The notes under the pieces are model-generated. The model saw only the letters and a program-made list of their open reading frames with translations, did no database searches and was not told where the DNA came from. Below are positions 11,443-28,611 of a stretch of DNA of 64,000 nucleotides, one piece after another. Each line of letters opens with the position of its first letter. The first letter of the stretch is position 1. The stretch covers positions 62,001-126,000 of IMG/VR virus record IMGVR_UViG_3300044972_002389, one strand, 5' to 3'. The position numbers and the translations under genes were made by a program.

Positions 11443-12554
11443 GAATTTACCATTTAGTGCCCTTAAAGAAGTTGCTAGAAGCTTATCAGCCATTGACAAC
11501 CAAATGGCAACAAGACAATGTGGGCTCAGTTTCAAGATATATTACAAGCTTTGAGTATGATGACCATTTAGTCGAACAAAGACTTACTCAAGATAAAAAT
11601 CAAAAAGACTTACAGGATGCATTGGCTGCCAGTGATTTAGAGCCCAATCCACAAGCCAAGGGCTATGTTTGGTTATGGACAGTGGATGGGGAAATAGAAC
11701 AAACTGGCACAATGGGCCTTAAGGCCATACCCTTGTGGAAAGAATTGGTGCGACGCCTCTTTGGTTGGCTTGGATCTCATGAATGGGACTACTTGACTTT
11801 TATTGGTGGACGCGGCAGCAGGAACAAGCTCTATAGCGCATTGGGTCAAATGTTGGCGCAGAGAGCTGGTGCCAAAGTATATTTTGATTTTGACACAAGT
11901 GACTTTGTTGTATATAAGCCCAGTGCAATAGTTCAACCAAAATTGCAAGAGGCTTTTGATTACCAACTTCCCCGGGATAAATGGAAGATAAAAACAGAAG
12001 GCGACAGCTATATTGATTTTTTGTTTGAAATTGATGGCAACGAATACGAGCTTCGAATGTCTCGATTGCAAGAGCCTCAGAAGAGGGGTATTTACGAGGT
12101 GGAATTTAGGCACACAGAGTATGGCATGGACATAAGTGGCACAGGTTCAGCCTTTAAAGTCTTCAGTGCTGTGTTTCAACTTCTCAAGTATGCTATTGAT
12201 CATCAAAAAACCTTACCTGTAAATGGACTTTGGTTCCAGGCTTGGGCCCCGAGCAGGAAAAAGCGTTATAAGAGTATGGCACCAAAATTAGCAAGACATC
12301 TGGGTTGGACTTGGGTAACCAAGCAAGAGAGTTTTCCCTACTCTCTCTCGCCAGGAACAGATGGCTACTTGATTCTCAAACCCAGTCTTGGCGAAACAGC
12401 TGGTGTGGGCAAGATAGTTAAAGGTGTGAACACTACCACCGATGTGGGACCTGATGCTGTTCAAAAACAAGCCCGGAAATTTCTCAACAAAGTCACAGCA
12501 GGAGGAGTTCCTCCTCAAACTCAAAGCAATGGCAAATTTCCCTCGGTTAAATAA
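11439..12554 (+). CDS. 371-aa modular protein with two more copies of the unknown 'TG...SR.KLY' domain and a short basic tail module
   Basis: WDYLTFIGGRGSRNKLY and GLWFQAWAPSRKKRY parallel the two domains at 10063-10980; junctions LLEA, LQEA, LGET. Confidence 0.8.
   Translation: MRIYHLVPLKKLLEAYQPLTTKWQQDNVGSVSRYITSFEYDDHLVEQRLTQDKNQKDLQDALAASDLEPNPQAKGYVWLWTVDGEIEQTGTMGLKAIPLWKELVRRLFGWLGSHEWDYLTFIGGRGSRNKLYSALGQMLAQRAGAKVYFDFDTSDFVVYKPSAIVQPKLQEAFDYQLPRDKWKIKTEGDSYIDFLFEIDGNEYELRMSRLQEPQKRGIYEVEFRHTEYGMDISGTGSAFKVFSAVFQLLKYAIDHQKTLPVNGLWFQAWAPSRKKRYKSMAPKLARHLGWTWVTKQESFPYSLSPGTDGYLILKPSLGETAGVGKIVKGVNTTTDVGPDAVQKQARKFLNKVTAGGVPPQTQSNGKFPSVK
12548..12553 (+). promoter_or_regulatory. Late promoter core TAAATA
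   Basis: Overlaps the previous stop; 7 nt before the ATG at 12561. Confidence 0.55.
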
Positions 12555-12560
12555 GCTGAA

Positions 12561-13556
12561 ATGGCAACTTTGTATAGTTTTGGTATGGATCCCACACGGT
12601 GGTACAGCAGGGCATTATATGCCTTCTCTACCAATGAATTAGGCTGGACTACAGGCAATAGTCCAGTCAATGGACTGGGCAGCATACAATCCATGGCGTA
12701 TGGAAACAATACGTGGGTTGGTGCTACAAATTTTGGAGACTTCACAGTAAGTGGTGATGGTGTAAATTGGTATTCCTACACTCCTGAAAACAAAAGTTGG
12801 CTTGTTAACAAAATCACATGGGGACAAGGATTGTTCACAGTTGTGGGACATGAAAAAAACTTCAGTAACCTTGCAGAAACTGGATTTGTCGCAGTGTCTG
12901 GAAATGGTGGTCCAGCAACTTGGGTCAGAAAATTTGTCAGTTATCAAGAACCCATGACTTTGTTTGATATCAAACACTTGGGCCTAGGAAAATGGATTGC
13001 TGTGGGCTGCACAAATCATCTGCGACAGCCTGTGGTAATCTATAGTGAAGACAACACTGACTCTTGGACAAGAATACTACTTCCAGATATTATCCCTGGC
13101 GGTATTTACAGTATTGAAGCCCACGTAGGAAGTAGTGTAAAAGTTTGGCTGGGCGGCAAAGGCTGGATAGCCTATACCAACGATTTTCAAACCACAAGCA
13201 CAGAATGGACATTGTTTGATAATTTAAAAGATCAAGGCAAATCCAAACCATTTACGCGGTTATTATACCGATCCACACTGGGCAAAGAAGCTATTGTTGC
13301 ACTGTCAGGATCTACAGTTTGGTTCAACGACACAGCTTTGAATTGGCGGAGCACTACACAAGAGGGCTATAGATTCCAGGACGTAGCTAATTTCCAAAAC
13401 CCCTTAACAAGCCAAGAGTCATTTAACTTTTCTGTTGGAGGCATGTTGAACCAGTACACTGGATTCAAAACTCCTTGGCAAGCCCAGAGCACACAAGAAT
13501 TCTCCCTCATTGGATATAACAATGGAGTCCAAGCCAGCAGCCTTATTGTTGTTTGA
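12561..13556 (+). CDS. Putative virion protein with beta-propeller/BNR-like repeats
   Basis: Repeated blade-like motifs (MAYGNNTWVG, VSGDGVNW, ITWGQGLFTVVG, YSEDNTDSWT); late promoter upstream. Confidence 0.6.
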   Translation: MATLYSFGMDPTRWYSRALYAFSTNELGWTTGNSPVNGLGSIQSMAYGNNTWVGATNFGDFTVSGDGVNWYSYTPENKSWLVNKITWGQGLFTVVGHEKNFSNLAETGFVAVSGNGGPATWVRKFVSYQEPMTLFDIKHLGLGKWIAVGCTNHLRQPVVIYSEDNTDSWTRILLPDIIPGGIYSIEAHVGSSVKVWLGGKGWIAYTNDFQTTSTEWTLFDNLKDQGKSKPFTRLLYRSTLGKEAIVALSGSTVWFNDTALNWRSTTQEGYRFQDVANFQNPLTSQESFNFSVGGMLNQYTGFKTPWQAQSTQEFSLIGYNNGVQASSLIVV

Positions 13557-13580
13557 CACATGTGCTGTCTGCCACACAAT
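13553..13580 (+). promoter_or_regulatory. Sigma70-like promoter TTGACA-N16-CACAAT
   Basis: Heads the replication gene block; same 16-bp spacing as other early promoters in the window. Confidence 0.5.
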
Positions 13581-13612
13581 CATGGCATACAACAAACGTG
13601 GAGCAAAAGTAG

Positions 13613-13888
13613 ATGGGTATCGGCACTCTAGGACCAAATGATCGCTCAAAGATTATGGCCCTTGTGAATTCAGGTATTGATGTGTTGCGCGAGATTGCTA
13701 CCCTCAAAGAGGGACTAAAAGACCAAGTGGGATCAGTAAGTGAGGAACTGGATATTGACAAAAAGATCCTAAACATGGCTATCCGAACCGCCTACAAGAT
13801 GAGCCAGCAGAATCAAGACACTTTGAACGATCTTCAAACACAGCTGGACAGTGTTGAAGAAGTGCTAAAAGCAGCAGGTGTTTCCTAA
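13613..13888 (+). CDS. Small helical dsDNA-binding protein (T4 DsbA-like)
   Basis: KIMALVNSG..VLREI..LKEGLKD.V..V.EEL.I.KKILN.AIR.A.K pattern; ggag SD; upstream of the polymerase. Confidence 0.55.
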   Translation: MGIGTLGPNDRSKIMALVNSGIDVLREIATLKEGLKDQVGSVSEELDIDKKILNMAIRTAYKMSQQNQDTLNDLQTQLDSVEEVLKAAGVS

Positions 13889-14168
13889 GGCTGCACTCAA
13901 AGCAAGGATACATTTTTATAGATCTTTGACTCAAAGATCTAAATGGATTGTAATGTTTTTTTTGGAGATTTTAGGTACAGCCAGCATACTGCTGGCTGTC
14001 GCCGTTTAAGCCTTTCAAATATTACCTTTGAGCACATTGTATTTGTTTTGGTTGTTTGGCAGTGTAGCCTTGACCATCAGCAGTATTTTGCGTAAGAATC
14101 TATTACTCGCTGTAATGATGTTGTTTTATACAGGGTTGAATTTATATGGATTATGGAGTTTTGGATGA
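13878..14168 (+). pseudogene. Small membrane-protein gene with an in-frame TAA
   Basis: GTG 13878 frame gives hydrophobic FFLEILGTASILLAVAV, TAA at 14007-14009, then AFQILPLSTLYLFWLFGS...LYGLWSFG to TGA 14166-14168, which overlaps the polymerase ATG as ATGA. Confidence 0.65.
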
Positions 14169-16921
14169 CGTATGTTGATGCTATTTTGGAGAAAGACAAA
14201 CACTGTATTCAAGTTGTGGAGCGTGTAAACCACAAACGAGTCTACAACACATATCCCAGCAAATACGTAATGTATTTTCCCAGTGAGCGTGGAAAATACA
14301 CTAGCATTTATGGTGAACGGCTGGATAAATTTGAAACCAATCGTTGGGAAGAGTTTCAAAGAGAGTGTCGCTTGGTTCCAAAAACACAACAATATGAAAG
14401 TGATAGCAATCCCATTTTCCGTTGTTTTTATGAACATTACAAAAATACAGCAAGTCCACAGTTGCATGTGGCGTTTTTTGACTTGGAAACTGATTTTGAT
14501 CCTGATCGGGGCTTCTCGTCAACTGACGAGGCGTTCAATCCCATTACAGCAGTATCTGTATATTTGAGTTGGCTGGGCAAAAACTTTACTCTTGTCCTCA
14601 AACCCAAAACACTCACAGTAGAGCAAGCATCAGCAGTTGTGGACAAATTTGAAGACACTGTGCTGTGTAGCAATGAAACTGAGCTATTGGATGTGTTTCT
14701 CACCCTCATTGAGGATGCAGATGTTCTCACAGGTTGGAATTCAGAGGGTTATGATATTCCCTATTTGCACAATCGTATCATTCAAATTTTGAGTAAGGAG
14801 CACACTAAAAGGCTGTGTCTCTGGAACAAATTTCCCAAGAAAAGGGAGTATGAAAGCTATGGCAAGCCCACTATTACTTTTGATCTAGTGGGCAGAGTCC
14901 ATCTTGACTATCTGCAACTGTACCGCAAGCATACCTATCACGAGATGCACAGTTATCGACTGGACTTTGTGGGCGAGTATGAAGTGGGCGACAAGAAGAT
15001 AGCTTACGAAGGCAGCTTGGACAAGCTCTATAACGAAGACTTTGAAAAGTTCATTGCCTATAACAGGCAAGACGTTATGCTGTTGGTGAAAATTGATCGC
15101 AAGCTGAAATTCATTGATCTAAGCAATGATCTAGCACACACAAACGGAGTGTTGATCCAAACAACAATGGGGTCAGTACAGCTTATTGACAATGCCATTA
15201 CTAACGAAGCACATGATCTTGGCTTATGTGTTCCTACTCGACGTAGAGACAATCCTGAAATCATGAAAGACGATCAGGGTGAAGACATTGAGCCCAATGG
15301 TATTGCTGGTGCATATGTGGCTGACCCAGTTGAAGGCATGCACAAATGGATTGGCGGTGTAGACATCAACAGTCTATATCCCAGTGCTATTCGAAGTTTG
15401 AACATGAGCAAGGAAACAGTAGTGGGGCAAATCCGCCCTGTGGGTAATGATCGTTTGATTCAACACAGGATGCAAAAGGAAAAACGCACTTTTGCTGACA
15501 GTTGGAACGAGATGTTTGGCATTATTGAGTATAACCAAGTGATGAATAGGGAAATGGTTATGCTGACTGTGGACTTTGAAGACGGCACCACTGTGGAACT
15601 CAGTGCTGACGAACTGTATCAATGGATTTTTGAAAATCCCAAAAAGCAAATGACGCTCAGTGCCAATGGCACTATTTTTGATCTCAACAAGGAAGGTGTG
15701 GTACCAGGCTTGCTGGCCCGCTGGTATGGTGAGAGAAAGGAGTTGCAGGCAGAAGCCAAAGCATGTTTCAAAAAAGCTGATGAAGAACCTAATCCCTCTA
15801 AGAAGAGTGAGTATCAAGAAAAAGCTGATTTTTATGACAGAAGGCAGTTGATTAAGAAAATTTTGCTAAATTCACTTTATGGAGCTATCGGAAATTCTAG
15901 CTCATCGTGGTTTGACAACCGTATTGCACAAAGTACTACTTTAACAGGTAGATGTATCGTCAAACACATGGGTAGTAAGATCAATGAGGTAATATCAGGG
16001 AAATATCACTACAAAGGTGATGCTGTCATATATGGCGACACCGACAGCATTTATTTTAGCGCATATCCAGTAATGAGCCAGCTTGAAGACTTCAAAAGCT
16101 TTGATTGGAGTCGTGAAGCAGTGGTGCAACTGTATGATCAAGTTGCAGACATCACTAACCAAAGCTTTCCTGGATTTATGAAACAGGCATTCAATGTACC
16201 TGAATCCAGGAGTGTGATCAAAGCTGGCCGTGAACTAGTAGCAAGCCATGGATTGTTCATTACCAAAAAACGGTATGCTGTGATGATCTACGACAAAGAA
16301 GGCAAGCGAAAGGATGTAGATGGCAAGCCAGGTGAGATCAAAGTTATGGGGCTTGATCTCAAGAGAAGTGATACACCAAAACCAGTCCAGGACTTCTTGA
16401 GTGAGATTTTAACTTTGGTTTTGACTGAGGTTGACAAAGACAGCATTTTCACGCGCATCAAGGAGTTCCGCACAGAGTTCAGCCAATGGCCCAGCTGGGC
16501 AAAAGGCAGCCCCAAAAGGGTGAATAACCTTACTCAATATGGCATGATTAAGAAAGCTCAGGAAAGCGTTGACCTCAACAAAGACACTGGGAAAAGAAAA
16601 ACTATTCCGGGCCATGTCCTTGCGAGCCTAAACTGGAACCTATTGTGTGAGATCTACAACGATTATGGATCAATGCGAATTCAAGACGGGCAAAAGGTGA
16701 TTGTCTGTAAGCTGAGATCAAACCCTTTGGGTATGACATCTGTTGCATACCCTGTAGATCAACTGTATCTTCCTGATTGGTTCAAGTCTATGCCTTTTGA
16801 CAACGCTCTTATGGAGGCCACAATTTTGGACAAGAAACTGGAAAACTTGTTGGGTGTATTGCACTGGAATCTTGAAGATGCCAAAAACAACGAAACTTTT
16901 GACAGCATGTTTAGTTTTTGA
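14165..16921 (+). CDS. Family B DNA polymerase (T4 gp43-like) with 3'-5' exonuclease
   Basis: ExoI FFDLET, ExoII GWNSEGYDIPY, ExoIII YNRQDV, DINSLYPS, KKILLNSLYG, YGDTDS, KKRYA; start MTYVDA at 14165; no intein seen. Confidence 0.97.
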   Translation: MTYVDAILEKDKHCIQVVERVNHKRVYNTYPSKYVMYFPSERGKYTSIYGERLDKFETNRWEEFQRECRLVPKTQQYESDSNPIFRCFYEHYKNTASPQLHVAFFDLETDFDPDRGFSSTDEAFNPITAVSVYLSWLGKNFTLVLKPKTLTVEQASAVVDKFEDTVLCSNETELLDVFLTLIEDADVLTGWNSEGYDIPYLHNRIIQILSKEHTKRLCLWNKFPKKREYESYGKPTITFDLVGRVHLDYLQLYRKHTYHEMHSYRLDFVGEYEVGDKKIAYEGSLDKLYNEDFEKFIAYNRQDVMLLVKIDRKLKFIDLSNDLAHTNGVLIQTTMGSVQLIDNAITNEAHDLGLCVPTRRRDNPEIMKDDQGEDIEPNGIAGAYVADPVEGMHKWIGGVDINSLYPSAIRSLNMSKETVVGQIRPVGNDRLIQHRMQKEKRTFADSWNEMFGIIEYNQVMNREMVMLTVDFEDGTTVELSADELYQWIFENPKKQMTLSANGTIFDLNKEGVVPGLLARWYGERKELQAEAKACFKKADEEPNPSKKSEYQEKADFYDRRQLIKKILLNSLYGAIGNSSSSWFDNRIAQSTTLTGRCIVKHMGSKINEVISGKYHYKGDAVIYGDTDSIYFSAYPVMSQLEDFKSFDWSREAVVQLYDQVADITNQSFPGFMKQAFNVPESRSVIKAGRELVASHGLFITKKRYAVMIYDKEGKRKDVDGKPGEIKVMGLDLKRSDTPKPVQDFLSEILTLVLTEVDKDSIFTRIKEFRTEFSQWPSWAKGSPKRVNNLTQYGMIKKAQESVDLNKDTGKRKTIPGHVLASLNWNLLCEIYNDYGSMRIQDGQKVIVCKLRSNPLGMTSVAYPVDQLYLPDWFKSMPFDNALMEATILDKKLENLLGVLHWNLEDAKNNETFDSMFSF

Positions 16922-16922
16922 A

Positions 16923-16972
16923 AGGTTGACAACGGAGCTATATGTCAAGTAGATTTGACAAAAGTCAACCTT
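16923..16972. repeat. Nested TTGAC/GTCAA inverted repeats after the polymerase gene
   Basis: AGGTTGAC (16923-30) matches GTCAACCT (16964-71), enclosing TTGAC-N13-GTCAA and TTGAC-AAAA-GTCAA. Confidence 0.6.
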
Positions 16973-16984
16973 AAGGAATAATTC

Positions 16985-17359
16985 ATGAATATTTTTTCTG
17001 CCTTATACGAACGCATACGACGGATGTTTGGGCCTGATCAAACACCAGTTTCAACTACTCTTGCACCCAGGACAGAACCAATCCAGCCAATAGTTGTGAC
17101 ACCCGCTGGAAATCCTGTGCCACCCAGCTCAGAGAAGGCAGCCCTTGTAATTGAAAAAGGTGCATACCAACCAATCACGTCTAGTCCAACAGATCCACCA
17201 GTGTTGCAGCAACCTGCCCCTGTAATTACTGCCAAACAAGAGCCATCACAGGAACCTCCCCCAGCTAAAACAGGGAAAAAGCCAAAAGCTACAACAGCCC
17301 TTAAGGAACCCAAGGCGCCTAGTCAACGCAAGGCACCAGCCAAAAAGAAAACTAATTAG
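16985..17359 (+). CDS. Pro/Lys-rich, probably disordered hypothetical protein
   Basis: aaggaa SD; P/T-rich middle and basic tail KAPSQRKAPAKKKTN. Confidence 0.65.
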   Translation: MNIFSALYERIRRMFGPDQTPVSTTLAPRTEPIQPIVVTPAGNPVPPSSEKAALVIEKGAYQPITSSPTDPPVLQQPAPVITAKQEPSQEPPPAKTGKKPKATTALKEPKAPSQRKAPAKKKTN

Positions 17360-17368
17360 CCAATTCTA

Positions 17369-18001
17369 GTGAGCCCTCTCTTTGGAACCTCTCTTGAAGA
17401 GAGGGCTCAACTCTTACGGTATAAGTCCTACCCTCCAACTTCACCGGCTTCTTGGAACTCACCAACAAGCACCCCCACTAGCACCTTAGTGTTCGTTACT
17501 GGCCATGTGTGTCTAGATTCAGTAGTGGACGACTTTCATGAAGTCGACAGCATAATTGAAGCTGAAGATTTGCTGTTTTCACAAGCAAACACTGTGGTGG
17601 AAAAATACGATGGATTGCCATTTGCACTCCGTAGACAGTCAACCTTATTAGGGCATCAAAATCGTCGAGGCTGTGGTAATCTCATTTTCACAACTCCGGA
17701 GATACGTGCCCAAATACCAGACAATCAACTGTATATTGATGACAGCAATTCCTGTAAACAAGTGGGCTGTTGGTACTCAGCAGGCGTGTTGCGCAAATTT
17801 GACAAACAAGGCAGTCAAATATTTGTTAGTGATCGGGTACCCGAGCACACTGCCTATGTGGCATACAAAGGTTCAAGTGATTTAGACAGCGTTGCACTCC
17901 TGTTCAAAAAAGAAGATCAAATGCGACTGTGGTGTCCCTTAAGAGTTGACATACCCGTGAGCATCGCTCACTATATTACAAAGGTTGTGTTTGACAACTG
18001 A
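17369..18001 (+). CDS. Truncated paralogue of the C-terminal part of a gp23-type major capsid protein
   Basis: RRGCGNLIFTTP, QVG, IFVS and AYVAYKGSSDLDSVALL echo the gp23-family segments I recall (RRGAGN..V.SP, VGTL, VYV, LIGYKGSSE.DA..FY); only 210 aa. Confidence 0.55.
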   Translation: MSPLFGTSLEERAQLLRYKSYPPTSPASWNSPTSTPTSTLVFVTGHVCLDSVVDDFHEVDSIIEAEDLLFSQANTVVEKYDGLPFALRRQSTLLGHQNRRGCGNLIFTTPEIRAQIPDNQLYIDDSNSCKQVGCWYSAGVLRKFDKQGSQIFVSDRVPEHTAYVAYKGSSDLDSVALLFKKEDQMRLWCPLRVDIPVSIAHYITKVVFDN

Positions 18002-18019
18002 CTCAATTGTGGAAAAATT

Positions 18020-18223
18020 ATGAAATCCCAAAAAACTCGAATATATGAGCCTACTGAACTCAAAACTTTATTTGAAGCATTGAACAGTGCACCACCTTGG
18101 CTAAGTCGAAGGTTCATACTCAAGAACATGATGGGTTGGACTGATGATGATTTGAAACAAAATGCCATCCTGGTTGACGAAGAGACAACACAACGCAAAA
18201 TGGGTAACAAAGGGAGTTATTGA
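18020..18223 (+). CDS. 67-aa protein resembling the C-terminal helix region of gp20-type portal proteins
   Basis: WLSRRFILKNMMGWTDDDLKQNAILVDEE resembles the portal C-terminal (Y/F)LS.RF.LK..LG.T.EE...N..L..EE. Confidence 0.5.
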   Translation: MKSQKTRIYEPTELKTLFEALNSAPPWLSRRFILKNMMGWTDDDLKQNAILVDEETTQRKMGNKGSY

Positions 18224-18978
18224 AAATGACAGCAACAGCTATTAAGGATGCAATTTCTGATCTTGCAAAGAACGTGATCAGTACTGGCTTTTACGAAAAA
18301 ATCAAGGTGTCTGGTGGCGCCAAAACCAGCACCATTGAGGCTATTGACAAAGACAAACAAGTGATTCTCAAGGCTGAAACTTTGCATCCTGTGGACGGCT
18401 GGGCTGGAGAATTTGGCCTTGCCAATCTAGGCTTGCTCAACAGCATTGTGAATGATTCCGAGTTTGCCCACAAAGACAGCAAGCTTGAACTAGTGCTTAC
18501 TGAGCGTGAAGGTGTAGACGTTCCCACTGAGATGCACTACACAAACAAGAGCAATAGTTTCATCAATTATCGCTTCCTAGCAAAAAACATGGTCCCAGAT
18601 CAACCCAAGTACATGGAACCACAGTGGGACGTGAAAATCAAACCCAGCAAAAGCAACATTCAACAGTTCAATTGGGCTGCTGGCAGTCTCAGCAGCTACG
18701 AGCAATACTTCATTCCCAAGACAGTTGATGGTAACCTCAAGTTTTTCATTGGAGATGAAGGTGCAGCTACTCAACGCGGCGGTGTAGTGTTTGCTACAGG
18801 GGTTACGGGCGAGTTTGAAAGCTCACACAAATGGCCTATTGCTCTTGTATCTGCACTTTTGAAGCTGGTTGATGGTGCTGATGCTGAAATGAGCTTCTCC
18901 GTCAAGGGTGCTATTCAGCTCAAGCTCAATACTGGCATTACCACATACAAGTATGTGCTGCCAGCAAAGCTGCGCTAA
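18220..18978 (+). CDS. DNA polymerase sliding clamp (gp45-like, jumbo-phage type)
   Basis: 252 aa; IEAIDKDKQVILKA, GEFGLANLG.LN and SVKGAIQLKLNTGITTYKYVLPA fit large-myovirus clamps; next to the polymerase. Confidence 0.7.
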   Translation: MKMTATAIKDAISDLAKNVISTGFYEKIKVSGGAKTSTIEAIDKDKQVILKAETLHPVDGWAGEFGLANLGLLNSIVNDSEFAHKDSKLELVLTEREGVDVPTEMHYTNKSNSFINYRFLAKNMVPDQPKYMEPQWDVKIKPSKSNIQQFNWAAGSLSSYEQYFIPKTVDGNLKFFIGDEGAATQRGGVVFATGVTGEFESSHKWPIALVSALLKLVDGADAEMSFSVKGAIQLKLNTGITTYKYVLPAKLR

Positions 18979-18988
18979 TAGGACACAG

Positions 18989-19014
18989 TGGGCACCCCAC
19001 AGTGCCCATTTTTT
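18989..19014 (+). terminator. Rho-independent terminator
   Basis: TGGGCAC-CCCACA-GTGCCCA followed by TTTTTT. Confidence 0.75.
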
Positions 19015-19025
19015 GGAGACTGCTT

Positions 19026-19556
19026 GTGCCAGTTGAACACGAACGCAAAATGCTCCTGCGACCTGAAAGCCCGCAGGAGCTACTACGACATTTGAAACGC
19101 CAACCCCTTGTGCAAACCTTTGAAATAACACAGGGTTATATCAACAAAAGTGCAAGAATTCGACATGTGGTACCACACAATGGTGATGCAGAAACGCATT
19201 GGTTCACTTTCAAAACCAAGGTTACTGGAAATACAGTGGAGATCGAAACAGAAATTTCAATCCACGACTATCACAAACTTTTCTTGATAGCTAAACCCGT
19301 AATCCACAAAACTCGCTGCAAGTTTCAAGAAGGGTTGAACTGTTGGGACGTGGATTTTTTCAAAAATCCCAAAAGCGGCGACATTTATTTGAGCATGGCA
19401 GAAGTGGAAATGCCAGAATTTGAGTTAGACCTTCCTGAGGTTCATCCTCTCTTACAGGAGAATTTTTGGCGCTGGATTGACGCAAACGACAAGAGGTTTC
19501 AGAACAAGAATCTTAGTAACTATAAAAAAGTTTTGATGAACCTGAAAGGTCTATAA
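19026..19556 (+). CDS. CYTH-domain protein (adenylate cyclase/triphosphatase-like)
   Basis: EHERK, ITQGY, ARIR, EIETEI, IHKTR, WDVDFF, MAEVE; GTG start after ggag SD. Confidence 0.85.
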   Translation: MPVEHERKMLLRPESPQELLRHLKRQPLVQTFEITQGYINKSARIRHVVPHNGDAETHWFTFKTKVTGNTVEIETEISIHDYHKLFLIAKPVIHKTRCKFQEGLNCWDVDFFKNPKSGDIYLSMAEVEMPEFELDLPEVHPLLQENFWRWIDANDKRFQNKNLSNYKKVLMNLKGL

Positions 19557-20344
19557 TGCCAAACAGCAAATATCGTAGCATCTTCATAAGCGATACGCAT
19601 CTTGGTAGTCGTGCATGCCAAGCTGAGCTACTTGTGGAGTTTTTGAAACACAACTCCTGCCAAAATCTATACCTCGTTGGTGACATATTTGATTTGTGGA
19701 AATTGAAAAGCAGCAAATTCTGGCCACAAACACATAGCAATGTGGTTCGAAGAATTCTCACTGCGGCCAAGAGAGGCACACAGGTGAGATATGTTTTAGG
19801 TAATCATGATGAGTACCTTCGAGCATGGATTCCAGACATACACACTTTTGGCAACATTGAGCTGGGCAATGCCTTTGAACATCACTCTGTTCATGGGCAG
19901 AGATTTTTGGTAACACACGGTGATTTGTTTGACGGTGTAATTCGATATCACAAATGGCTTAGCTTGATGGGCGACAAAGCACACAGTTTTTTACTGTGGT
20001 TGAACACACATTTGAATCATATGCGCCGGTTTTTTGGAAAAGATTATTGGAGTCTAAGTTCATACCTTAAAACAAACACGAAACAAGCTGTTGCATTTAT
20101 CACCAAATACGAGCAACATGTAGTACAATATGCTCGGGACGAAGCATTTCATGGAGTAATTTGTGGCCATATTCATTCTCCATCGTTGAAAACGTTTGAG
20201 GATGGGTTTGTGTATATGAATTGTGGTGATTTTTGTGAAACTGTGTCAGCTTTGGTTGAAAACTTTGATGGCTCAATAGAGCTACTGGTTTACGACACTG
20301 AAACAAAAAGTATGATGACGAAAAACACATGGAGCCTTGAATGA
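19556..20344 (+). CDS. LpxH-like metallophosphoesterase, resembling the PlcP phospholipase C clade
   Basis: YRSIFISDTHLG.R.CQAE, LYLVGDIFD.W, GNHDE, HGD.FD, ICGHIH, YMNCGDFCE; directly upstream of an Agt-like GT4. Confidence 0.85.
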   Translation: MPNSKYRSIFISDTHLGSRACQAELLVEFLKHNSCQNLYLVGDIFDLWKLKSSKFWPQTHSNVVRRILTAAKRGTQVRYVLGNHDEYLRAWIPDIHTFGNIELGNAFEHHSVHGQRFLVTHGDLFDGVIRYHKWLSLMGDKAHSFLLWLNTHLNHMRRFFGKDYWSLSSYLKTNTKQAVAFITKYEQHVVQYARDEAFHGVICGHIHSPSLKTFEDGFVYMNCGDFCETVSALVENFDGSIELLVYDTETKSMMTKNTWSLE

Positions 20345-21333
20345 GACTTGTGATTGTTGATGACAACTGCCAAGACCAAGTGAATGGTGTTGTAACTACA
20401 ATGAATGCAGTGAAAAAACAAATGTTTTCTCGAGGCATACAGAATCTCATTCACATCACTCCTGATCAAATGATGTCTATGCCTGCATTGGTATATCCAG
20501 GTGCTCGCATACCATTGAATTTTTGGAATTTGAAAAAAAGAATAGAGGCGTATGAACCCACACACTTGCACATTTGTACAGAAGGTGTGCTGGGCTTAAC
20601 TGCTAGGCAATTTTTTCAAAACAAAAATTGGCGCTACACAACTAGCTTTCACACAAGATGGGATCACTATCTCAAGGAAAAATTTGGTGTGCCGGCCCTC
20701 AAAACCATGAGGTATCTCAAATGGTTTCATCAAAATAGTGCAGCAACTTTGGTCAACACTCCTACTATGCAAAGAGAGATGGTGTCGCTTGGCCTGTCTC
20801 AAGCCATCACATGGTCACGGGGAGTCAACACCCAACTGTTTCAATTTAATGACCGCAAGTGTGACACCAAGCCCACATTGTTGAGTGTTGGTCGAATCAG
20901 TGCTGAGAAAAATTTAGAGGTGTTTTGTAGCCTATCAGCAGAAAAATACAATCTAGTGTGTGTTGGTGATGGCCCTGATCTCAAGCGGTTACAGAACAAA
21001 TACCCCTGGGTGACATTTACTGGGCAATTGAGCGGTAAGCAACTGGTACAGCAGTTCCAAAATGCTGACTGCTTTGTTTTCACCAGCAAAAGTGACACGT
21101 TTGGGTTGGTTATGATTGAAAGCATGAGTGTTGGTACTCCTGTTGCAGCATTTCCTGTGCAGGGTCCAATAGATGTTGTAGATGATGGGGTGACTGGTGT
21201 GCTAAATGAGGATATTCAGACAGCTATCTCGCAATGTTTGACATTGAGTCGAAAAACTGTTTTTGAAGGCAGCAAGCGATGGAGTTGGGAAAAAACAACT
21301 GATATCTTTGTTGATACGCTGGTACCCAAATGA
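20341..21333 (+). CDS. GT4 glycosyltransferase, resembling Agt glycolipid synthases
   Basis: QVNGVVTT, HICTEG.LG, TTSFHTR, SRGV, VGRISAEKNL, VGDGP, DTFGLVMIESM..GTPVAAFP. Confidence 0.88.
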   Translation: MRLVIVDDNCQDQVNGVVTTMNAVKKQMFSRGIQNLIHITPDQMMSMPALVYPGARIPLNFWNLKKRIEAYEPTHLHICTEGVLGLTARQFFQNKNWRYTTSFHTRWDHYLKEKFGVPALKTMRYLKWFHQNSAATLVNTPTMQREMVSLGLSQAITWSRGVNTQLFQFNDRKCDTKPTLLSVGRISAEKNLEVFCSLSAEKYNLVCVGDGPDLKRLQNKYPWVTFTGQLSGKQLVQQFQNADCFVFTSKSDTFGLVMIESMSVGTPVAAFPVQGPIDVVDDGVTGVLNEDIQTAISQCLTLSRKTVFEGSKRWSWEKTTDIFVDTLVPK

Positions 21334-21557
21334 AACATAAAAAAACCATTCCATCAAATTTTCCCACTCTCAAATGTGTTGCATGCGGCACAAGCTGTGA
21401 GCCTTACAGGAAATACGTTTGTGACAATGATGGGGCAGTAGTCCATACTCAAAGTGACATTTGGCCAGAATATTTCCGTGACATGGGGACCACCCGTATT
21501 GAGTTTTGTAGTGCACAATGTGGCCTCAAATATTGCACAGTAAATCAATTGGTGTAG
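21330..21557 (+). CDS. Small Cys-rich (zinc-binding-like) protein
   Basis: CVAC near the N-terminus and EFCSAQC near the C-terminus. Confidence 0.55.
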   Translation: MKHKKTIPSNFPTLKCVACGTSCEPYRKYVCDNDGAVVHTQSDIWPEYFRDMGTTRIEFCSAQCGLKYCTVNQLV

Positions 21558-21613
21558 CGGTTGATTTAGCTGACTACAGCATATAATCTGAACACATAAC
21601 AAAGAGAGAAATA

Positions 21614-21985
21614 ATGACAGAACCAACTACAAGAAAAATCTACGTGACTTTTCAACGTGAAGGGATTCACAAGTATCCAGCAGCTGGAACTGACCCCTCC
21701 CTTGCAGATGTAAATTTTCTTCAATATCCGCATAGGCACATGTTTCATTTCAAGGTTGGAATTGGCGTCAATCACCTAGACCGAGACATTGAATTTATCA
21801 TTTTCAAGCGTTGGCTGGAAAGTCTCTATGGTGATGGTGTGATCCAACTGGATTTCAAAAGCTGCGAGATGATCGCCGAAGACCTCTACGCCCAAATCTC
21901 TGCTCGCTATCCAGGTCGTGCAGTGAGCATTGACGTTAGTGAAGATGGTGAGAATGGGGCTGTGCTAGCCTGGGACGCTGCATAA
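21614..21985 (+). CDS. T-fold QueD paralogue with LxxxHRHxF signature (DpdL-like)
   Basis: FLQYPHRHMFHF, DRDIEFI, SCEMIA and VSEDGENGA; lacks the canonical QueD C-x3-HGH motif; two genes upstream of dpdA. Confidence 0.8.
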   Translation: MTEPTTRKIYVTFQREGIHKYPAAGTDPSLADVNFLQYPHRHMFHFKVGIGVNHLDRDIEFIIFKRWLESLYGDGVIQLDFKSCEMIAEDLYAQISARYPGRAVSIDVSEDGENGAVLAWDAA

Positions 21986-22000
21986 CCACCAAGGATTGCT

Positions 22001-22062
22001 ATACAAAGTATTTGAGCGCCAGGAGATCGAGATAGGATTGTGCTGGCTCAAATACTTTGTAT
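22001..22062. repeat. Perfect 17-bp inverted repeat with a 28-nt spacer
   Basis: ATACAAAGTATTTGAGC (22001-17) and GCTCAAATACTTTGTAT (22046-62). Confidence 0.9.
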
Positions 22063-22155
22063 TGGCGATAACCTTATAATTTTCAATGCTATAATTGTCA
22101 AAAACTCCTGTGGTTTATATACTATCTCTATTAGAGAATATTTGAAGGATCAAAA

Positions 22156-23244
22156 ATGCCCAATGTATTTGTATGGCCTATCGAGCCATTGGATAATCGC
22201 TACACCCAACAATGGTATCACGAGATTCCGTTGCGGCTCCAAGAAATAGTTGGAAATGCAGCAAAAGTAATCCAACTTGATGGGGTCCAAAACACTACAA
22301 GCACCACATCTGGTGCATTTTTGAATTTCAGCGACACCAACAGATGGAAAAGCACTCAACTGGTTGAGTTTCTCAACAAACATGATGCTGGAGAAACAAC
22401 TCCAAATGATGTGCATTTGTTCACTGACGCTTGGAATCCAGTGATTCTGCAAGTCAAGTATATGAATGATCTCATGGGATATAATTGGAACATACAAGGT
22501 TACTGGCATGCTGGAGCATACGATCCCACTGATATCCTTGGATATAAAATGAGCAAACCGTGGCCCTGGCTAGCTGAGCAGGCACTGTTTCATGCCTGCG
22601 ATGAGAATTGGTATGCAACAGATTTTCATAAAAAAATGTTTTTGAGCAATCTGGGCATCAGCAATGAATATCATCACAAAGCCAAAACTAGTGGGCAACC
22701 ACACTCTGCTATTGTCAAACAAATGCAAGATATTATGCAGGACAGCCGAGAGAGGAAACAGGGCGTTATTTGGCCACACCGTTACAATCCAGATAAGCAG
22801 CCTGAAATTGCTGAAGATCTCTCCAACAGCATGAAACAGCCTTGGTGTATTACACAAAAAATGAATCTCAACAAAAGCAGTTATTACGAAAAGCTGGCTG
22901 ACTGCCAAGTAATTTTTTCCTGTAGCTTGCATGAAAACTTGGGCATCAGTGTAATGGAAGCTGTGCTGGCAGATGTGATCCCAGTGCTGCCCAATCGGTG
23001 CAGCTACAGCGAAATGTATCATCCTGATTTTCTCTATCCCAGCAACTGGACTCAAGATTGGGAAAGTTATCAAACACACAAACAACAATTGACTGAATTT
23101 ATTCAGTACAGATTGAATCACCCCAAAAAGTTCAGTAGGCAGTTGGAAAAGCAAAAGAAAGTGCTCTTACAAAAATATCTTTCAGCTAGCGTAATGTTTG
23201 AAAACATCAGCAACACAGTTGCTAGATCAACCACAGTAAAGTAA
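22156..23244 (+). CDS. GT-B fold glycosyltransferase within the deazaguanine cluster
   Basis: LFTDAWNP, YWHAGAYDP, WPHRY.PDKQPE and SLHENLGISVMEA (E-x7-E) with PVLP...SY.EM. Confidence 0.8.
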   Translation: MPNVFVWPIEPLDNRYTQQWYHEIPLRLQEIVGNAAKVIQLDGVQNTTSTTSGAFLNFSDTNRWKSTQLVEFLNKHDAGETTPNDVHLFTDAWNPVILQVKYMNDLMGYNWNIQGYWHAGAYDPTDILGYKMSKPWPWLAEQALFHACDENWYATDFHKKMFLSNLGISNEYHHKAKTSGQPHSAIVKQMQDIMQDSRERKQGVIWPHRYNPDKQPEIAEDLSNSMKQPWCITQKMNLNKSSYYEKLADCQVIFSCSLHENLGISVMEAVLADVIPVLPNRCSYSEMYHPDFLYPSNWTQDWESYQTHKQQLTEFIQYRLNHPKKFSRQLEKQKKVLLQKYLSASVMFENISNTVARSTTVK

Positions 23245-23253
23245 GATATATCT

Positions 23254-24912
23254 ATGACAAAACTTTCCAGCCCCAACCCACATTTGAAAAAAATTGATCA
23301 AAACATGCAACCTGTGGTGGGTAGAGACATGTGGACCACCAACAAGGACTATGCTATTTTTCTTCCTTCAATCTCAGCGATCTATGTGCGACTAGTAAGT
23401 CAGCCCAACGCTCGCACAGTCAAGGGGCTGCCGGGTGGATTGCAGGATTTGGACTTTCTGCAAACCAATACCAACTTATTTTATTATCCCACTGCACTCT
23501 ACAGCAGCGGTCACAGTTATTGGGATCCTGCTCAAAGTGATATCCAAGAAGCTATGGTGCAAAAGCGAGACAAAAACGCCTCAGTAATTGTGGGCGACAG
23601 TGGTGGTTATCAGATTGCTACTGGCGTTCTCAAATGGCCTTGGCAGAAAAAAGAAAAGCAAACTGATCAAGACTGGATGAAGGACAAAGACGCCATTAGG
23701 ATGAAAATCCTACGCTGGCTTGAACACACTTGTGACTACAGTATGGTATTAGATGTCCCCACAGGCAGCTTGTTGAAGTTTGGTAACGATCCCATCACAG
23801 GTGAGAACCTACATCCTGGGGTTAAGAACTTTAGAGACTGTCTTGAAAGCAGTATGGAGAATCACAACTTTTTCATCAAAAATCGTCGGGAAGGTAGTAC
23901 ACAATTTTTGAATGTGTTGCAGGGGCGCAATCAAGAAGAAGGTGACATTTGGTGGGACGTTGTGAAAGATCTTCCTTTTGAAACCTGGGCATTCAGTAAT
24001 GTGCAAGCCAGCAACTTTGCTATAAATCTCCGTCGGATCATTATCATGCGAGATGGCAAGTATTTGGATAACAGAGATTGGATCCATTATCTAGGCAATG
24101 GCAAAATCAAGGCAGGCTGCGCTCTTACTACACTTCAACGAGTGTGGAGAAAGCACATCAACGAGCGTACAACTCTCAGTTACGATGCAGCAAGTCCTTT
24201 TGTGAACGTAGCAAAAGGCAACATCTACTACAGTTGGGAAGTAAGTCCGCAAAGCATTGCATATAAAAACAACTCGTTGCCAGACAAAAAAGAGCTTAAG
24301 GGCAGTCAAGAACTGTTTCAAGACTGGATCAATCGCCACAATCAAAAACATGCTGTTCGCGAAAGCAGCATTGGCAAGCGGATCACCATTGGTGATATCT
24401 GTGTCAAAGGTTATGAAGATCTCAATTTCAAAAAACAAGCTTTTTCACAAAAAGAGTTTGAAAGCTTGTTGTATCAACAAAGCTTGGAAGGCGTTCATGG
24501 CGAGAAGTTTCGCTACAGTGATGAATACAAACATTATCTTATGCATGAGCACACTGACCACGGCAGCGGCATGTTTGATTGGGGCAAGAAAGAGTTTAAG
24601 GACCATGAAAAGTATCAGGTCAAATGGCCCAGCAGCATGGATGGTCTCAGCTATGTGCTGGGCATGAGCCACAATGTTGAGCTTCATATTGAAGCTATTC
24701 AACATGCATGTGCAATGCAAGACCTGCCAATGGAGGAGAGGAAACATCACATCAGCGAAGACTTGATTGAATTTGCTGGGGGACTTTGTGAAGAGATCTT
24801 CACTAGTGAAAAACCCATGCAACTGATTGAAAAACATTCTGCTATGTTAGCCAAAATCACAGGAATGAACGCTGATAACAACATTGTCATGGATTTTGAT
24901 GAATTTGAATAG
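23254..24912 (+). CDS. dpdA: DpdA-like DNA base-exchange transglycosylase (TGT fold)
   Basis: TGT motifs IVGDSGGYQI, MVLDVP, NVLQG, IHYLG, SYDAASPF; next to folE and a T-fold gene. Confidence 0.8.
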   Translation: MTKLSSPNPHLKKIDQNMQPVVGRDMWTTNKDYAIFLPSISAIYVRLVSQPNARTVKGLPGGLQDLDFLQTNTNLFYYPTALYSSGHSYWDPAQSDIQEAMVQKRDKNASVIVGDSGGYQIATGVLKWPWQKKEKQTDQDWMKDKDAIRMKILRWLEHTCDYSMVLDVPTGSLLKFGNDPITGENLHPGVKNFRDCLESSMENHNFFIKNRREGSTQFLNVLQGRNQEEGDIWWDVVKDLPFETWAFSNVQASNFAINLRRIIIMRDGKYLDNRDWIHYLGNGKIKAGCALTTLQRVWRKHINERTTLSYDAASPFVNVAKGNIYYSWEVSPQSIAYKNNSLPDKKELKGSQELFQDWINRHNQKHAVRESSIGKRITIGDICVKGYEDLNFKKQAFSQKEFESLLYQQSLEGVHGEKFRYSDEYKHYLMHEHTDHGSGMFDWGKKEFKDHEKYQVKWPSSMDGLSYVLGMSHNVELHIEAIQHACAMQDLPMEERKHHISEDLIEFAGGLCEEIFTSEKPMQLIEKHSAMLAKITGMNADNNIVMDFDEFE

Positions 24913-24932
24913 CAATAACACAATTTTTGTGT

Positions 24933-28593: not shown

Positions 28594-28611
28594 CTGCCAA
28601 AGGACAAAAAA

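What the first reader, a model, noticed from the sequence alone, without database searches (positions are those of the whole stretch)
17369..18223. Tandem truncated capsid-like and portal-like paralogues among replication genes: possible immune decoys
Seen: a 210-aa ORF resembling the gp23 C-terminal part and a 67-aa ORF resembling the portal C-terminal helices, between polymerase and clamp, with TTGACA at 17991 and no TAAATA. Known: several defences sense structural proteins (Avs systems sense portal/terminase; CapRel and Lit sense capsid protein). Inference: fragments made before the real proteins could occupy such sensors without activating them, or regulate assembly.
Basis: inference. Interest (0 to 1): 0.7.

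Follow-up and report, generated by a model that had tools for sequence, protein, structure and literature searches.

The report
Stand-alone mini capsid and portal genes
A lake-water jumbo phage carries, among its DNA-replication genes, two conserved small genes that are stripped-down copies of its own capsid protein and of the tail end of its portal protein. The copies are real and old, what they do is untested, and an immune-decoy role is only my leading guess (about 0.3).

Summary

**ORF-A (17369-18001, 210 aa)** is a genuine HK97-fold relative of the T4-type major capsid protein (MCP).
- A profile of its family matches the phage's own MCP at 98.9 % probability.
- The AlphaFold model (pLDDT 92) matches T4 gp23 at Z 15.4.
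- It is not just a C-terminal fragment. It spans gp23 residues 108-520, so it lacks the propeptide and N-arm, and it is far too short to hold the insertion domain.

**ORF-B (18020-18223, 67 aa)** copies the last helices of the portal, with 37 % identity to the phage's own portal.

**Evidence that both are working genes**
- Both are under purifying selection.
- They sit in a conserved block of P-rich ORF, ORF-A, ORF-B, sliding clamp and a CYTH-like gene.
- That stretch has sigma-70-like promoters and no T4-type late promoter.

**Distribution.** ORF-A belongs to an undescribed family of about 50 clusters of short "mini-MCPs". In every context I examined they lie next to replication, tRNA-repair or ClpP genes, and never in a recognisable head-gene module. 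The nearest cultured relatives lack both genes.

**Function.** It is untested. My best guess (about 0.3) is that they are non-assembling mimics acting as counter-defence decoys. Regulation of head assembly and a clamp-linked role for ORF-B are live rivals.

The parts
14153..16921 (+). Family-B DNA polymerase (context, upstream flank)
   Evidence: Pfam DNA_pol_B E 2.1e-29 and phrog_262 E 1e-198.
16926..16982 (+). Two overlapping sigma-70-like promoter candidates (TTGACA-18-TAGATT and TTGACA-16-AATAAT). This is the likely start of the transcript carrying the P-rich ORF, ORF-A, ORF-B and the clamp.
   Evidence: They match 10/12 and 11/12 consensus positions. Genome-wide, such sites number 46 on the + strand and 10 on the - strand. 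Function is inferred, not shown.
16985..17359 (+). 124-aa proline-rich, lysine-tailed ORF (pI 10), always directly upstream of ORF-A
   Evidence: It is present as a 92-124 aa ORF in the contigs examined. Its stop lies 1-10 nt from the ORF-A start, with an ATGA overlap in L040, which suggests translational coupling. It has no family match.
17369..18001 (+). ORF-A, the mini capsid protein: an HK97-fold core homologous to T4 gp23 residues 108-520. It has no propeptide or N-arm and has internal deletions.
   Evidence: The relative L039 has ATG where the window has GTG.
17371..17408 (+). Conserved 15-bp RNA hairpin that begins inside the ORF-A start codon
   Evidence: dG is -28.5 kcal/mol. The arms are invariant in four lineages apart from one C>U change that keeps a G-U pair, although about 70 % of synonymous sites differ across the gene. 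No compensatory changes were seen, and the hairpin is absent from the L034/L040 lineage.
17991..18018 (+).
   Evidence: The -10 element ends 1 nt before the ORF-B ATG, so it could only yield an mRNA lacking that start. The hexamer overlaps the conserved F-D-N codons of ORF-A.
18020..18223 (+). ORF-B, the mini portal: a copy of the C-terminal (crown) helices of the T4-type portal
   Evidence: dN/dS is 0 to 0.13.
18226..18978 (+). Sliding clamp (PCNA/gp45-like). Its ATG lies 2 nt after the ORF-B stop, and its Shine-Dalgarno sequence lies inside the last ORF-B codons.
   Evidence: The Atlas model has TM 0.76 to archaeal PCNA, with gp45-like feature hits. For the junction sequence. The ORF-B/clamp adjacency is kept even where a Thg1-like gene separates ORF-A from ORF-B.

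Best explanation
**What is established (about 0.9).** ORF-A and ORF-B are long-established, selected, stand-alone paralogues of the phage's own major capsid protein and portal.
- ORF-A keeps the compact P- and A-domain core of the HK97 fold.
- It has lost the N-arm and propeptide. At 210 aa against gp23 residues 108-520 it also cannot hold the insertion domain, and the E-loop region looks much shortened.
- By general knowledge of HK97 capsids, these missing parts lock subunits into a lattice.
- ORF-B keeps only the last portal helices.

**Expression (inferred).** The genes appear to be transcribed with the replication genes from sigma-70-like promoters near 16926-16982. ORF-A looks translationally coupled to the upstream P-rich ORF, behind a conserved start-site hairpin. 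ORF-B looks coupled to the clamp gene.

**Mechanism I commit to (about 0.3, not shown).** They are soluble, non-polymerising mimics of the surfaces that other proteins recognise on MCP and portal. They would be made outside the late programme and would act as counter-defence decoys or competitive blockers of host sensors that detect these two folds.
For: **Homology and fold**

**Real genes**
- About 210-aa homologues run from 46 to 96 % identity, and 64-69 aa ORF-B homologues from 59 to 99 %.
- dN/dS is 0.24 and 0.09 for ORF-A, and 0 and 0.13 for ORF-B.

**Unlikely to be a shell protein**
- The model aligns from gp23 residue 108 onward, so there is no N-arm.
- The cultured relatives PA5oct, Phosso and Yen9-04 lack both genes.

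**Non-late, non-structural context in every lineage examined**
- Polymerase and clamp.
- Thg1-like gene. The cultured phage phiN3 has gp2 directly upstream of Thg1.
- ClpP, mini-MCP and T4 Rnl1-type RNA ligase.
- DnaB.
- tRNA-repair neighbours are what one expects near counter-defence against translation-targeting abortive infection.

**Evolution and wider pattern**
- ORF-A evolves 3-10 times faster than its neighbours. In the closest pair its dN/dS is 0.24, against 0.024 for the clamp, 0.034 for CYTH and 0.074 for the phosphoesterase.
- The genome holds further stand-alone pieces of virion proteins: an MCP E-loop/spine-helix piece and two tail-fibre pieces.

**Literature**
- Avs7, Avs8 and Avs10 envelop the monomeric HK97 core, chiefly the A-domain, and other Avs families sense portal (bioRxiv 10.64898/2026.01.04.697583). 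ORF-A therefore retains the region such sensors recognise.
Against: - No sensor, binding partner or expression timing was observed. No RNA run was listed.
- Binding of the MCP core is what activates Avs7, so a mimic might trigger the sensor and not block it.
- Selection on ORF-A is purifying, with no sign of positive selection.
- Three distant family members carry Tat-like signal peptides (P0011, P0014, P0017). That points outside the cytoplasm for those members.
- ORF-B is linked more tightly to the clamp than to ORF-A, which hints at a replisome-related role.
- ClpP coupling in another branch suggests yet another activity.
- The promoter assignment rests on consensus matches only.
Confidence: 0.3

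Rival explanations
1. **Regulators of the phage's own head assembly.** The mini-MCP would bind MCP, capsomers or scaffold, and the mini-portal would bind the portal crown or its partners. Together they would delay or limit prohead nucleation until replication is under way.
For: - They retain capsid and portal surfaces.
- They are made from a non-late gene cluster.
- One lineage also keeps a full-length 438-aa MCP paralogue at the same locus.
- The model's best match is gp23 in the unexpanded prohead state.
Against: - Cultured relatives with 65-75 % identical MCPs assemble heads without these genes.
- The family never sits in a recognisable head module in the contexts examined.
- ORF-A diverges much faster than the highly conserved MCP it would have to fit.
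Confidence: 0.2
2. **ORF-B is a sliding-clamp partner, functionally separate from ORF-A.** It would be a small helical protein recruited from the portal crown, coupling replication, late transcription or packaging to the clamp.
For: - The ORF-B stop and the clamp start are 0-2 nt apart in the lineages whose junction could be read.
- The pair stays together where a Thg1-like gene separates ORF-B from ORF-A.
- ORF-B is much better conserved than ORF-A.
Against: - I saw no recognisable clamp-binding tail of the kind the polymerase carries at its own C-terminus.
- Part of the conservation at the ORF-B 3' end may only reflect the clamp's ribosome-binding site.
Confidence: 0.15
3. **Weapon against competitors.** The mini-MCP would act as a dominant-negative subunit that poisons capsid assembly of co-infecting phages or capsid-hijacking satellites.
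For: - It keeps the A- and P-domain contact surfaces but lacks the interlocking N-arm.
- It is an accessory gene, patchily distributed and fast-evolving.
Against: - It would also threaten the phage's own closely similar MCP.
- No competitor or satellite context was seen.
Confidence: 0.1
4. **Minor virion component.** For example, a gp24-like vertex or portal-proximal capsid protein that happens to be encoded away from the head genes.
For: - The nearest ESM Atlas structure cluster is named 'putative capsid vertex protein' (TM 0.72).
- T4 gp24 matches at Z 12.
- No gp24-type second full-length Gp23-family gene was found in the 328.6-kb record.
Against: - It has no N-arm.
- It is absent from cultured relatives with the same capsid type.
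- There is no late promoter nearby.
- Its neighbours in all lineages examined are replication or tRNA-repair genes.
- It diverges quickly.
Confidence: 0.1
5. **Decaying gene fragments.** They would be left by recombination or homing-endonuclease activity and have no function.
For: - A homing-endonuclease-like gene follows the MCP gene here and in PA5oct.
- Several other virion-protein pieces exist in the genome.
Against: - Intact frames of constant length persist down to 34-46 % identity.
- dN/dS is well below 1.
- The family has about 50 clusters.
- The AlphaFold model is a confident, compact fold.
- In an unrooted tree all full-length MCPs fall on one side of a 100/100 branch, so the minis are not recent copies of the resident MCP.
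Confidence: 0.03

Closest known systems
T4 gp23 major capsid protein and its paralogue gp24 (Pfam PF07068, HK97 fold)
   Same: They share ancestry and fold: Z 15.4 to gp23 and Z 12.0 to gp24. Conserved motifs such as RRGxGN are shared, and the family profile hits true MCPs at E about 1e-20.
   Different: ORF-A is half the length. It has no propeptide or N-arm and carries internal deletions. It is encoded among replication genes without a late promoter and is absent from close cultured relatives. gp24 is a full-length vertex protein encoded next to gp23 (the gp24 details are from general knowledge).
Sinorhizobium phage phiN3 gp2 (AKF13269.1, 149 aa, 'hypothetical protein')
   Same: It is a short MCP-like protein that starts at the same conserved motif. 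It matches the mini-MCP profile at E 3e-4, and its BFVD model matches the ORF-A model. It lies directly upstream of a Thg1 gene, as the mini-MCP does in L040.
   Different: It is even shorter and very divergent, with a long branch in the tree. No mini-portal was found in phiN3. Its function is also unknown.
T4 gp20 portal (PF07230), C-terminal crown helices
   Same: ORF-B aligns with the phage's own portal residues 472-527. Through the alignment to 6uzc and 3ja7 these correspond to about gp20 residues 464-519 of 524.
   Different: ORF-B is 67 aa only. It has no clip, stem or wing, so it cannot form a portal ring. It is translationally coupled to the clamp gene.
Encapsulins (HK97 fold exapted for a non-virion role)
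   Same: They are a precedent for the capsid fold being reused outside a virion, and they match the model at Z about 9.5.
   Different: Encapsulins keep the elements needed to form closed shells and come with cargo genes. ORF-A lacks an N-terminal arm or helix, has no cargo partner, and is clearly nearer to gp23.
MCP- and portal-sensing defences (Avs7/8/10 and portal-sensing Avs, CapRel, Lit/Gol) and phage-encoded mimic or decoy inhibitors such as Ocr
   Same: ORF-A retains the A/P core that Avs7-type sensors envelop. As I recall (not tested here), it also starts within the region equivalent to the T4 Gol segment of gp23. An accessory, fast-evolving gene among non-late genes fits the usual profile of anti-defence genes.
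   Different: I know of no described protein decoy that is a paralogue of the phage's own capsid or portal protein (literature searches). No interaction was tested here.

Membership tests
Gp23-type major capsid protein (PF07068, HK97 fold) | Sequence match above Pfam's curated threshold | tested here: not met
   ORF-A scores 20.1 bits against a cut-off of 24.4. Of 51 family members, 32 match at E <= 0.01, with a best E of 2.8e-18. Profile-profile comparison with the phage's own MCP gives 98.9 % probability. Homology is therefore firm even though this sequence is below threshold.
Gp23-type major capsid protein (PF07068, HK97 fold) | HK97 fold with P and A domains | tested here: met
   The AlphaFold2 model has pLDDT 92 and pTM 0.87. 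The top Foldseek hits are HK97-fold capsid proteins. VIA-align gives Z 15.4 to gp23, with 185 of 210 residues aligned.
Gp23-type major capsid protein (PF07068, HK97 fold) | N-terminal propeptide and N-arm (and a full E-loop) that interlock subunits in the shell | tested here: not met
   Model residue 1 aligns with gp23 residue 108. The protein begins at the conserved QPM-type strand. The stretch between that strand and the spine helix is about 40 residues, against about 95 in the phage's own MCP.
Gp23-type major capsid protein (PF07068, HK97 fold) | Encoded in the head-morphogenesis module and expressed late | tested here: not met
   It lies between the DNA polymerase and the clamp. There is no TAAATA on the + strand from 12548 to 24935. 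The true MCP lies beside the scaffold and portal genes about 150-160 kb away in record G001. Expression itself was not measured.
Gp23-type major capsid protein (PF07068, HK97 fold) | Forms capsomers or a shell | tested here: inconclusive
   The four-copy complex prediction gave no verdict. This is evidence neither for nor against self-assembly.
T4-type portal (PF07230) | Sequence match above Pfam's curated threshold | tested here: not met
   ORF-B scores 15.2 bits against a cut-off of 22.9.
T4-type portal (PF07230) | Homology to the portal sequence | tested here: met
   BLASTP gives 37 % identity over 57 aa, E 2e-8. hhalign gives 95.8 % probability. The ORF-B profile hits the portal C-termini of three cultured phages.
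T4-type portal (PF07230) | Clip, stem and wing domains that build the dodecameric ring | tested here: not met
   ORF-B is 67 aa and covers only profile positions 386-433 of 433, which is the phage's own portal residues 472-527 of 585.
Phage anti-defence decoy or mimic | Binds and neutralises a host immune sensor | not testable with these tools
   The host is unknown and no sensor was identified. This needs co-expression and binding assays.
Phage anti-defence decoy or mimic | Early expression, before the trigger protein is made | tested here: inconclusive
   There are sigma-70-like promoter matches and no late-promoter motif. No RNA data could be listed.
Phage anti-defence decoy or mimic | Accessory, patchily distributed, faster-evolving than core neighbours | tested here: met
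   The genes are absent from PA5oct, Phosso and Yen9-04. ORF-A has dN/dS 0.24, against 0.02-0.07 for its neighbours in the closest pair.
T4 gp24-type vertex protein | Full-length MCP paralogue encoded next to the MCP gene | tested here: not met
   ORF-A is 210 aa, has no N-arm and lies at a distant locus.

The most novel reading that the evidence does not exclude
Jumbo and T4-superfamily phages maintain a dedicated family of mini-capsid proteins, and in this clade also a mini-portal. These would be self-derived protein decoys: lattice-incompetent copies of the folds that bacterial pattern-recognition receptors (the Avs families, CapRel, Lit) detect. Made outside the late programme, they would saturate or mis-assemble those sensors. 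This would be a new class of anti-defence protein, created by domesticating the phage's own structural genes.
Probability: 0.25. Interest if true: 0.85.

Novelty: new variant of a known kind. Interest (0 to 1): 0.62.

Why it matters
Capsid and portal proteins are the phage molecules most often sensed by bacterial immunity, and they are hard for a phage to change. This finding is a conserved, widespread family of N-arm-less capsid-fold proteins, about 50 sequence clusters, encoded among replication and tRNA-repair genes. Here it sits beside a portal-crown peptide fused into the clamp operon.

It shows that phages repeatedly keep stand-alone pieces of their own virion proteins as working genes. 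Whether these are decoys, assembly timers or clamp partners, they have no family model in Pfam or PHROGs.

The question is directly testable. The proteins are small and predicted to fold well. At least one distant member, gp2 of Sinorhizobium phage phiN3, belongs to a cultured phage.

Tried and rejected
- **Shallow alignment.** AlphaFold2 on the 9-sequence alignment gave an unusable model (pLDDT 35). Only the 51-member alignment worked.
- **Self-assembly.** Complex prediction of four ORF-A copies gave no verdict (score 0.00). It is evidence neither way.
- **Cultured phages.** tblastn of ORF-A and ORF-B against 50,697 cultured phage records found nothing.
- **More loci.** Locus searches with family alignments gave an error (A2), no hit in viral contigs (A4) and one 1.1-kb metagenome contig.
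- **Expression.** No RNA run was listed. Twenty lake-water DNA runs hold the region. I did not use read laying, because seven independent IMG/VR contigs already carry the locus at 99-100 % identity.
- **DUF6267.** This Atlas language-model lead for ORF-A is false. DUF6267 matches a different gene, in a 749-aa open frame, at G000 214.9-216.0 kb.
- **Second portal-like hit.** The Portal_T4 hit at window 24980-25696 is GTP cyclohydrolase I.
- **Stop-codon readthrough.** I considered readthrough fusing the P-rich ORF to ORF-A. The two are in frame in the window and in L038 but not in L026 or L040, so I rejected it as a conserved feature.
- **Alternative genetic code.** It is not needed. Table 11 gives ORFs up to 2378 aa.
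- **Prohead-protease site.** I considered the conserved I-x-E-A-E motif as a cleavage site. It is better explained as the conserved start of the spine helix, which the true MCP also has.
- **Known RNA families.** Rfam has no credible match in 16800-18400.
- **Literature.** Searches found no description of MCP- or portal-derived stand-alone proteins of this kind.
Full report
**Where the window lies.** The window is bases 61942-125941 of a 223-kb IMG/VR viral record that CheckV rates 54 % complete. Near-identical longer records of 328.6 and 309.8 kb exist. At least 20 lake-water metagenome runs hold the region. The phage's major capsid protein (MCP) is 75 % identical to that of Sinorhizobium phage Phosso, 68 % to Pseudomonas phage PA5oct and 65 % to Yersinia phage fHe-Yen9-03/04. 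It is therefore a T4-superfamily jumbo myovirus. Table 11 gives long open frames, up to 2378 aa, so no other genetic code is needed.

**The observation.** ORF-A (17369-18001, 210 aa) and ORF-B (18020-18223, 67 aa) exist as described.
- Alone they match Pfam Gp23 (E 4.7e-4, profile 213-316 of 376) and Portal_T4 (E 0.009, profile 386-433 of 433). Both scores are below the curated cut-offs. PHROGs agrees weakly.
- The phage's real MCP and portal are not in this record. I found them in the 328.6-kb twin: the MCP in a 435-aa open frame (318 bits) and the portal in a 595-aa frame (339 bits).
- ORF-B is 37 % identical over 57 aa to the phage's own portal residues 471-527 of 585 (E 2e-8).
- ORF-A gives only a short BLAST match to the phage's own MCP (29 % over 38 aa).

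**ORF-A belongs to a family and is a true capsid-protein homologue.**
- Close homologues run from 46 to 96 % identity. Most are 210-211 aa. The two shorter ones (170 and 194 aa) look like start-site calls, and the 194-aa one reads as 210 aa from a TTG start in L026.
- An exhaustive profile search found 52 clusters at 50 % identity. Nearly all are proteins of 195-290 aa, not full-length MCPs.
- Of 51 aligned members, 32 hit Pfam Gp23, with a best E of 2.8e-18.
- The family profile matches the phage's own MCP at hhalign probability 98.9 %, E 1.7e-17. ORF-A residues 80-209 align with MCP residues 252-406 of 413.
- The profile hits the true MCPs of Phosso, PA5oct and Yen9-04 at E 3e-21 to 1.5e-17, and nothing else in those genomes.
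- Intermediate members align collinearly with the MCP from its residue 134 onward (P0017), or at 40 % identity over 107 aa (P0036).

**Structure of ORF-A.**
- With the deep alignment, AlphaFold2 gives a confident model (pLDDT 92, pTM 0.87).
- The top Foldseek matches are HK97-fold capsid proteins.
- VIA-align ranks T4 gp23 in the unexpanded prohead first: Z 15.4, rmsd 3.8 Å, 185 of 210 residues aligned, model 1-210 against gp23 108-520. gp24 follows at Z 12, HK97 gp5 at about 10 and encapsulins at about 9.5.
- ORF-A is therefore not merely a C-terminal fragment. It is a complete but minimal P- and A-domain core that starts at the conserved QPM-type strand. It has no propeptide or N-arm, and at this length it cannot hold the insertion domain. 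By eye, the E-loop and spine-helix region is much shortened.

**ORF-B.**
- Eleven clusters of 64-69 aa share 59-99 % identity.
- The profile matches the phage's own portal residues 472-527 at 95.8 % probability.
- In PA5oct, Phosso and Yen9-04 it hits only the portal C-terminus, at E 3.4e-7, 2.1e-5 and 2.4e-3.
- Through the alignment of the phage's own portal to T4 gp20 (6uzc and 3ja7; own 264-518 against gp20 257-510), ORF-B corresponds to about gp20 residues 464-519.
- From my knowledge of the published T4 portal structure, these are the C-terminal crown helices.
- Language-model features also place ORF-B among short Portal_T4-bearing clusters.

**These are selected genes, not debris (pairwise Nei-Gojobori estimates).**
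- ORF-A: dN/dS 0.24 in the closest pair (dS 0.10), and 0.09 in the next pair, where dS is saturated.
- ORF-B: no non-synonymous change in the closest pair, and 0.13 in the next.
- ORF-A is the fastest-evolving gene of the block after the P-rich ORF. In the closest pair the clamp is at 0.024, the CYTH-like gene at 0.034 and the phosphoesterase at 0.074.
- Against L026, amino-acid identity is 49 % for ORF-A, 64 % for ORF-B and 83 % for the clamp.
- In an unrooted maximum-likelihood tree all six full-length MCPs, including the L040 paralogue, fall on one side of a 100/100 branch. No mini-MCP groups with a resident MCP, so the family is old and not a set of recent truncations. The root is unknown and several branches are long.

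**Context in the window.** The gene order is as follows.
- DNA polymerase, 14153-16921.
- A 124-aa proline-rich, lysine-tailed ORF.
- ORF-A, then ORF-B.
- A PCNA/gp45-like sliding clamp (Atlas TM 0.76 to archaeal PCNA).
- A CYTH-like protein, a metallophosphoesterase and a glycosyltransferase.
- Further downstream: GTP cyclohydrolase I, a radical-SAM protein, a methyltransferase and more glycosyltransferases. By eye I take these, together with a possible QueD-like ORF, for a DNA-modification set.

**Context in relatives.**
- The block of P-rich ORF, ORF-A, ORF-B, clamp and CYTH-like gene recurs in every relative.
- In the GROS21 lineage (L034, L040) a Thg1-like gene separates ORF-A from ORF-B, while ORF-B stays fused to the clamp start.
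- That lineage also has a full-length 438-aa MCP paralogue between the polymerase and the P-rich ORF. It is 36 % identical to this phage's true MCP and has a lysine-rich tail.
- More distant mini-MCPs lie between ClpP and a T4 Rnl1-type RNA ligase (L036, L047), or next to DnaB (L048).
- In L036 a 68-aa ORF holding the MCP N-arm up to the QPM motif precedes ClpP. It looks as if ClpP split an MCP paralogue at exactly the point where mini-MCPs begin.
- The cultured phage phiN3 has a 149-aa gp2 with the same start motif, directly upstream of its Thg1 gene.
- No family member I examined sits in a recognisable head module.

**Expression signals (inference only).**
- Sigma-70-like sites are strongly strand-biased genome-wide, 46 on + and 10 on -.
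- Five of them cluster at window 13553-17991. Two lie just upstream of the P-rich ORF, at 16926 and 16955.
- No TAAATA occurs on the + strand between 12548 and 24935.
- By contrast, a perfect TATAAATA precedes the gene at 24980, and CATAAATA precedes the true portal gene.
Its -10 element ends one base before the ORF-B ATG, and the hexamer is the conserved F-D-N codons of ORF-A, so it is unlikely to drive ORF-B.
- ORF-A starts with GTG (ATG in L039, TTG in L026), 1-10 nt after the upstream stop and with no evident Shine-Dalgarno sequence.
- A 15-bp hairpin (17371-17408, dG -28.5) begins within the start codon. Its arms are invariant across four lineages although about 70 % of synonymous sites differ in the gene.
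- I read this as translational coupling or gating. There is no covariation, so the support is nucleotide conservation alone.
- The clamp ATG (18226) follows the ORF-B stop by 2 nt, and its Shine-Dalgarno sequence lies inside ORF-B.

**What it most likely does.**
- Shown: paralogy, fold, selection, conserved non-structural context, absence from close cultured relatives, and loss of the N-arm.
- Inferred: the proteins cannot build a lattice or a ring, and they are made outside the late programme.
- The most economical reading is that they are soluble mimics of MCP and portal surfaces.
- I favour counter-defence (about 0.3) for three reasons. The genes have an accessory, fast-evolving profile. 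Neighbours in two branches are tRNA-repair genes (Thg1-like, Rnl1), which suit defence against translation-targeting abortive infection. And a 2026 preprint shows that Avs7, Avs8 and Avs10 envelop the monomeric HK97 core, chiefly the A-domain, while other Avs families sense portal (10.64898/2026.01.04.697583).
- Against this: binding of that core is what activates Avs7, no partner is known, selection is purifying, three distant members carry Tat-like leaders, and ORF-B is tied to the clamp more tightly than to ORF-A.
- The rivals are an assembly timer (0.2), a clamp-linked role for ORF-B (0.15), a competitor poison (0.1), a minor virion or vertex protein (0.1) and non-functional fragments (0.03).

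**Novelty.** The fold and the parent families are known. What is new is a sizeable family of N-arm-less mini capsid proteins outside head modules, and a portal-crown peptide in a clamp operon. Pfam and PHROGs have no family for them, and my literature searches found no description. I rate it a new variant of a known kind. The decoy interpretation is plausible but untested.

Noticed in passing
window 17371-17408 (+): A 15-bp hairpin begins inside the ORF-A start codon. Its arms are invariant in four lineages whose synonymous sites are otherwise saturated. It is probably a translational gate or coupling element, and it is absent from the L034/L040 lineage.
   Followed up: partly
G000:C1:143816-144151 (L001:1513-1848), outside the window: A third MCP-derived gene. 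The first 53 residues of this 111-aa ORF are 43 % identical to the phage's own MCP residues 169-221, the E-loop and spine helix (E 4e-9). They are fused to a C-terminal domain shared by several tandem small paralogous ORFs whose products end in ...LTWT, LTWG or VSWS.
   Followed up: partly
G000:C1:31943-32332 and 32392-32649 (L052), outside the window: Another tandem pair of stand-alone virion-protein pieces. One is a 129-aa tail-fibre C-terminal domain (phrog_18186, E 1e-28) that also resembles the C-termini of the 2378-aa and 603-aa proteins. The other is an 85-aa copy of residues 85-150 of a 2512-aa tail-fibre-like protein.
   Followed up: partly
L034:6187-7503 and L040:6871-8187: In a related lineage a full-length 438-aa MCP paralogue lies between the DNA polymerase and the mini-MCP locus. 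It is 36 % identical to this phage's true MCP, lacks the insertion region and has a lysine-rich C-terminal tail. A Gad2-family (PF26128) gene lies about 9 kb downstream.
   Followed up: partly
L036:7091-8696 and L047:733-2027: A ClpP protease gene is translationally coupled to a mini-MCP and followed by a T4 Rnl1-type RNA ligase. In L036 a 68-aa ORF encoding the MCP N-arm precedes ClpP, as if ClpP had been inserted into an MCP paralogue.
   Followed up: partly
Proteins P0011, P0014 and P0017 (L037 for P0011): Three distant mini-MCP family members carry twin-arginine (Tat)-like signal peptides ahead of the conserved SPL start motif. This suggests export of the folded capsid-like domain.
   Followed up: no
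window 16985-17359 (+): A 124-aa ORF with a conserved amphipathic N-terminus, a long proline-rich middle and a lysine-rich tail (pI 10) always lies directly upstream of the mini-MCP. It has no family match, and its function is unknown.
   Followed up: partly
window 19002-31029 (+): Downstream of the clamp lie a CYTH-like protein, a metallophosphoesterase, several glycosyltransferases, a methyltransferase, a possible QueD-like ORF (judged by eye only), GTP cyclohydrolase I and a radical-SAM protein. I take this for a 7-deazaguanine and sugar DNA-modification set.
   Followed up: partly
L012:2613-3467 (-), in twin record G001: A 284-aa gene on the opposite strand directly follows the true MCP gene. 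By eye it looks like a homing endonuclease. PA5oct has a Hef-like homing endonuclease at the same place. This is a possible route for duplicating MCP pieces.
   Followed up: no
window 4833-8561 (+): A 1242-aa multidomain protein combines GNAT acetyltransferase domains with a dCMP/cytidine deaminase domain. It is an unusual fusion, upstream of the polymerase cluster.
   Followed up: no
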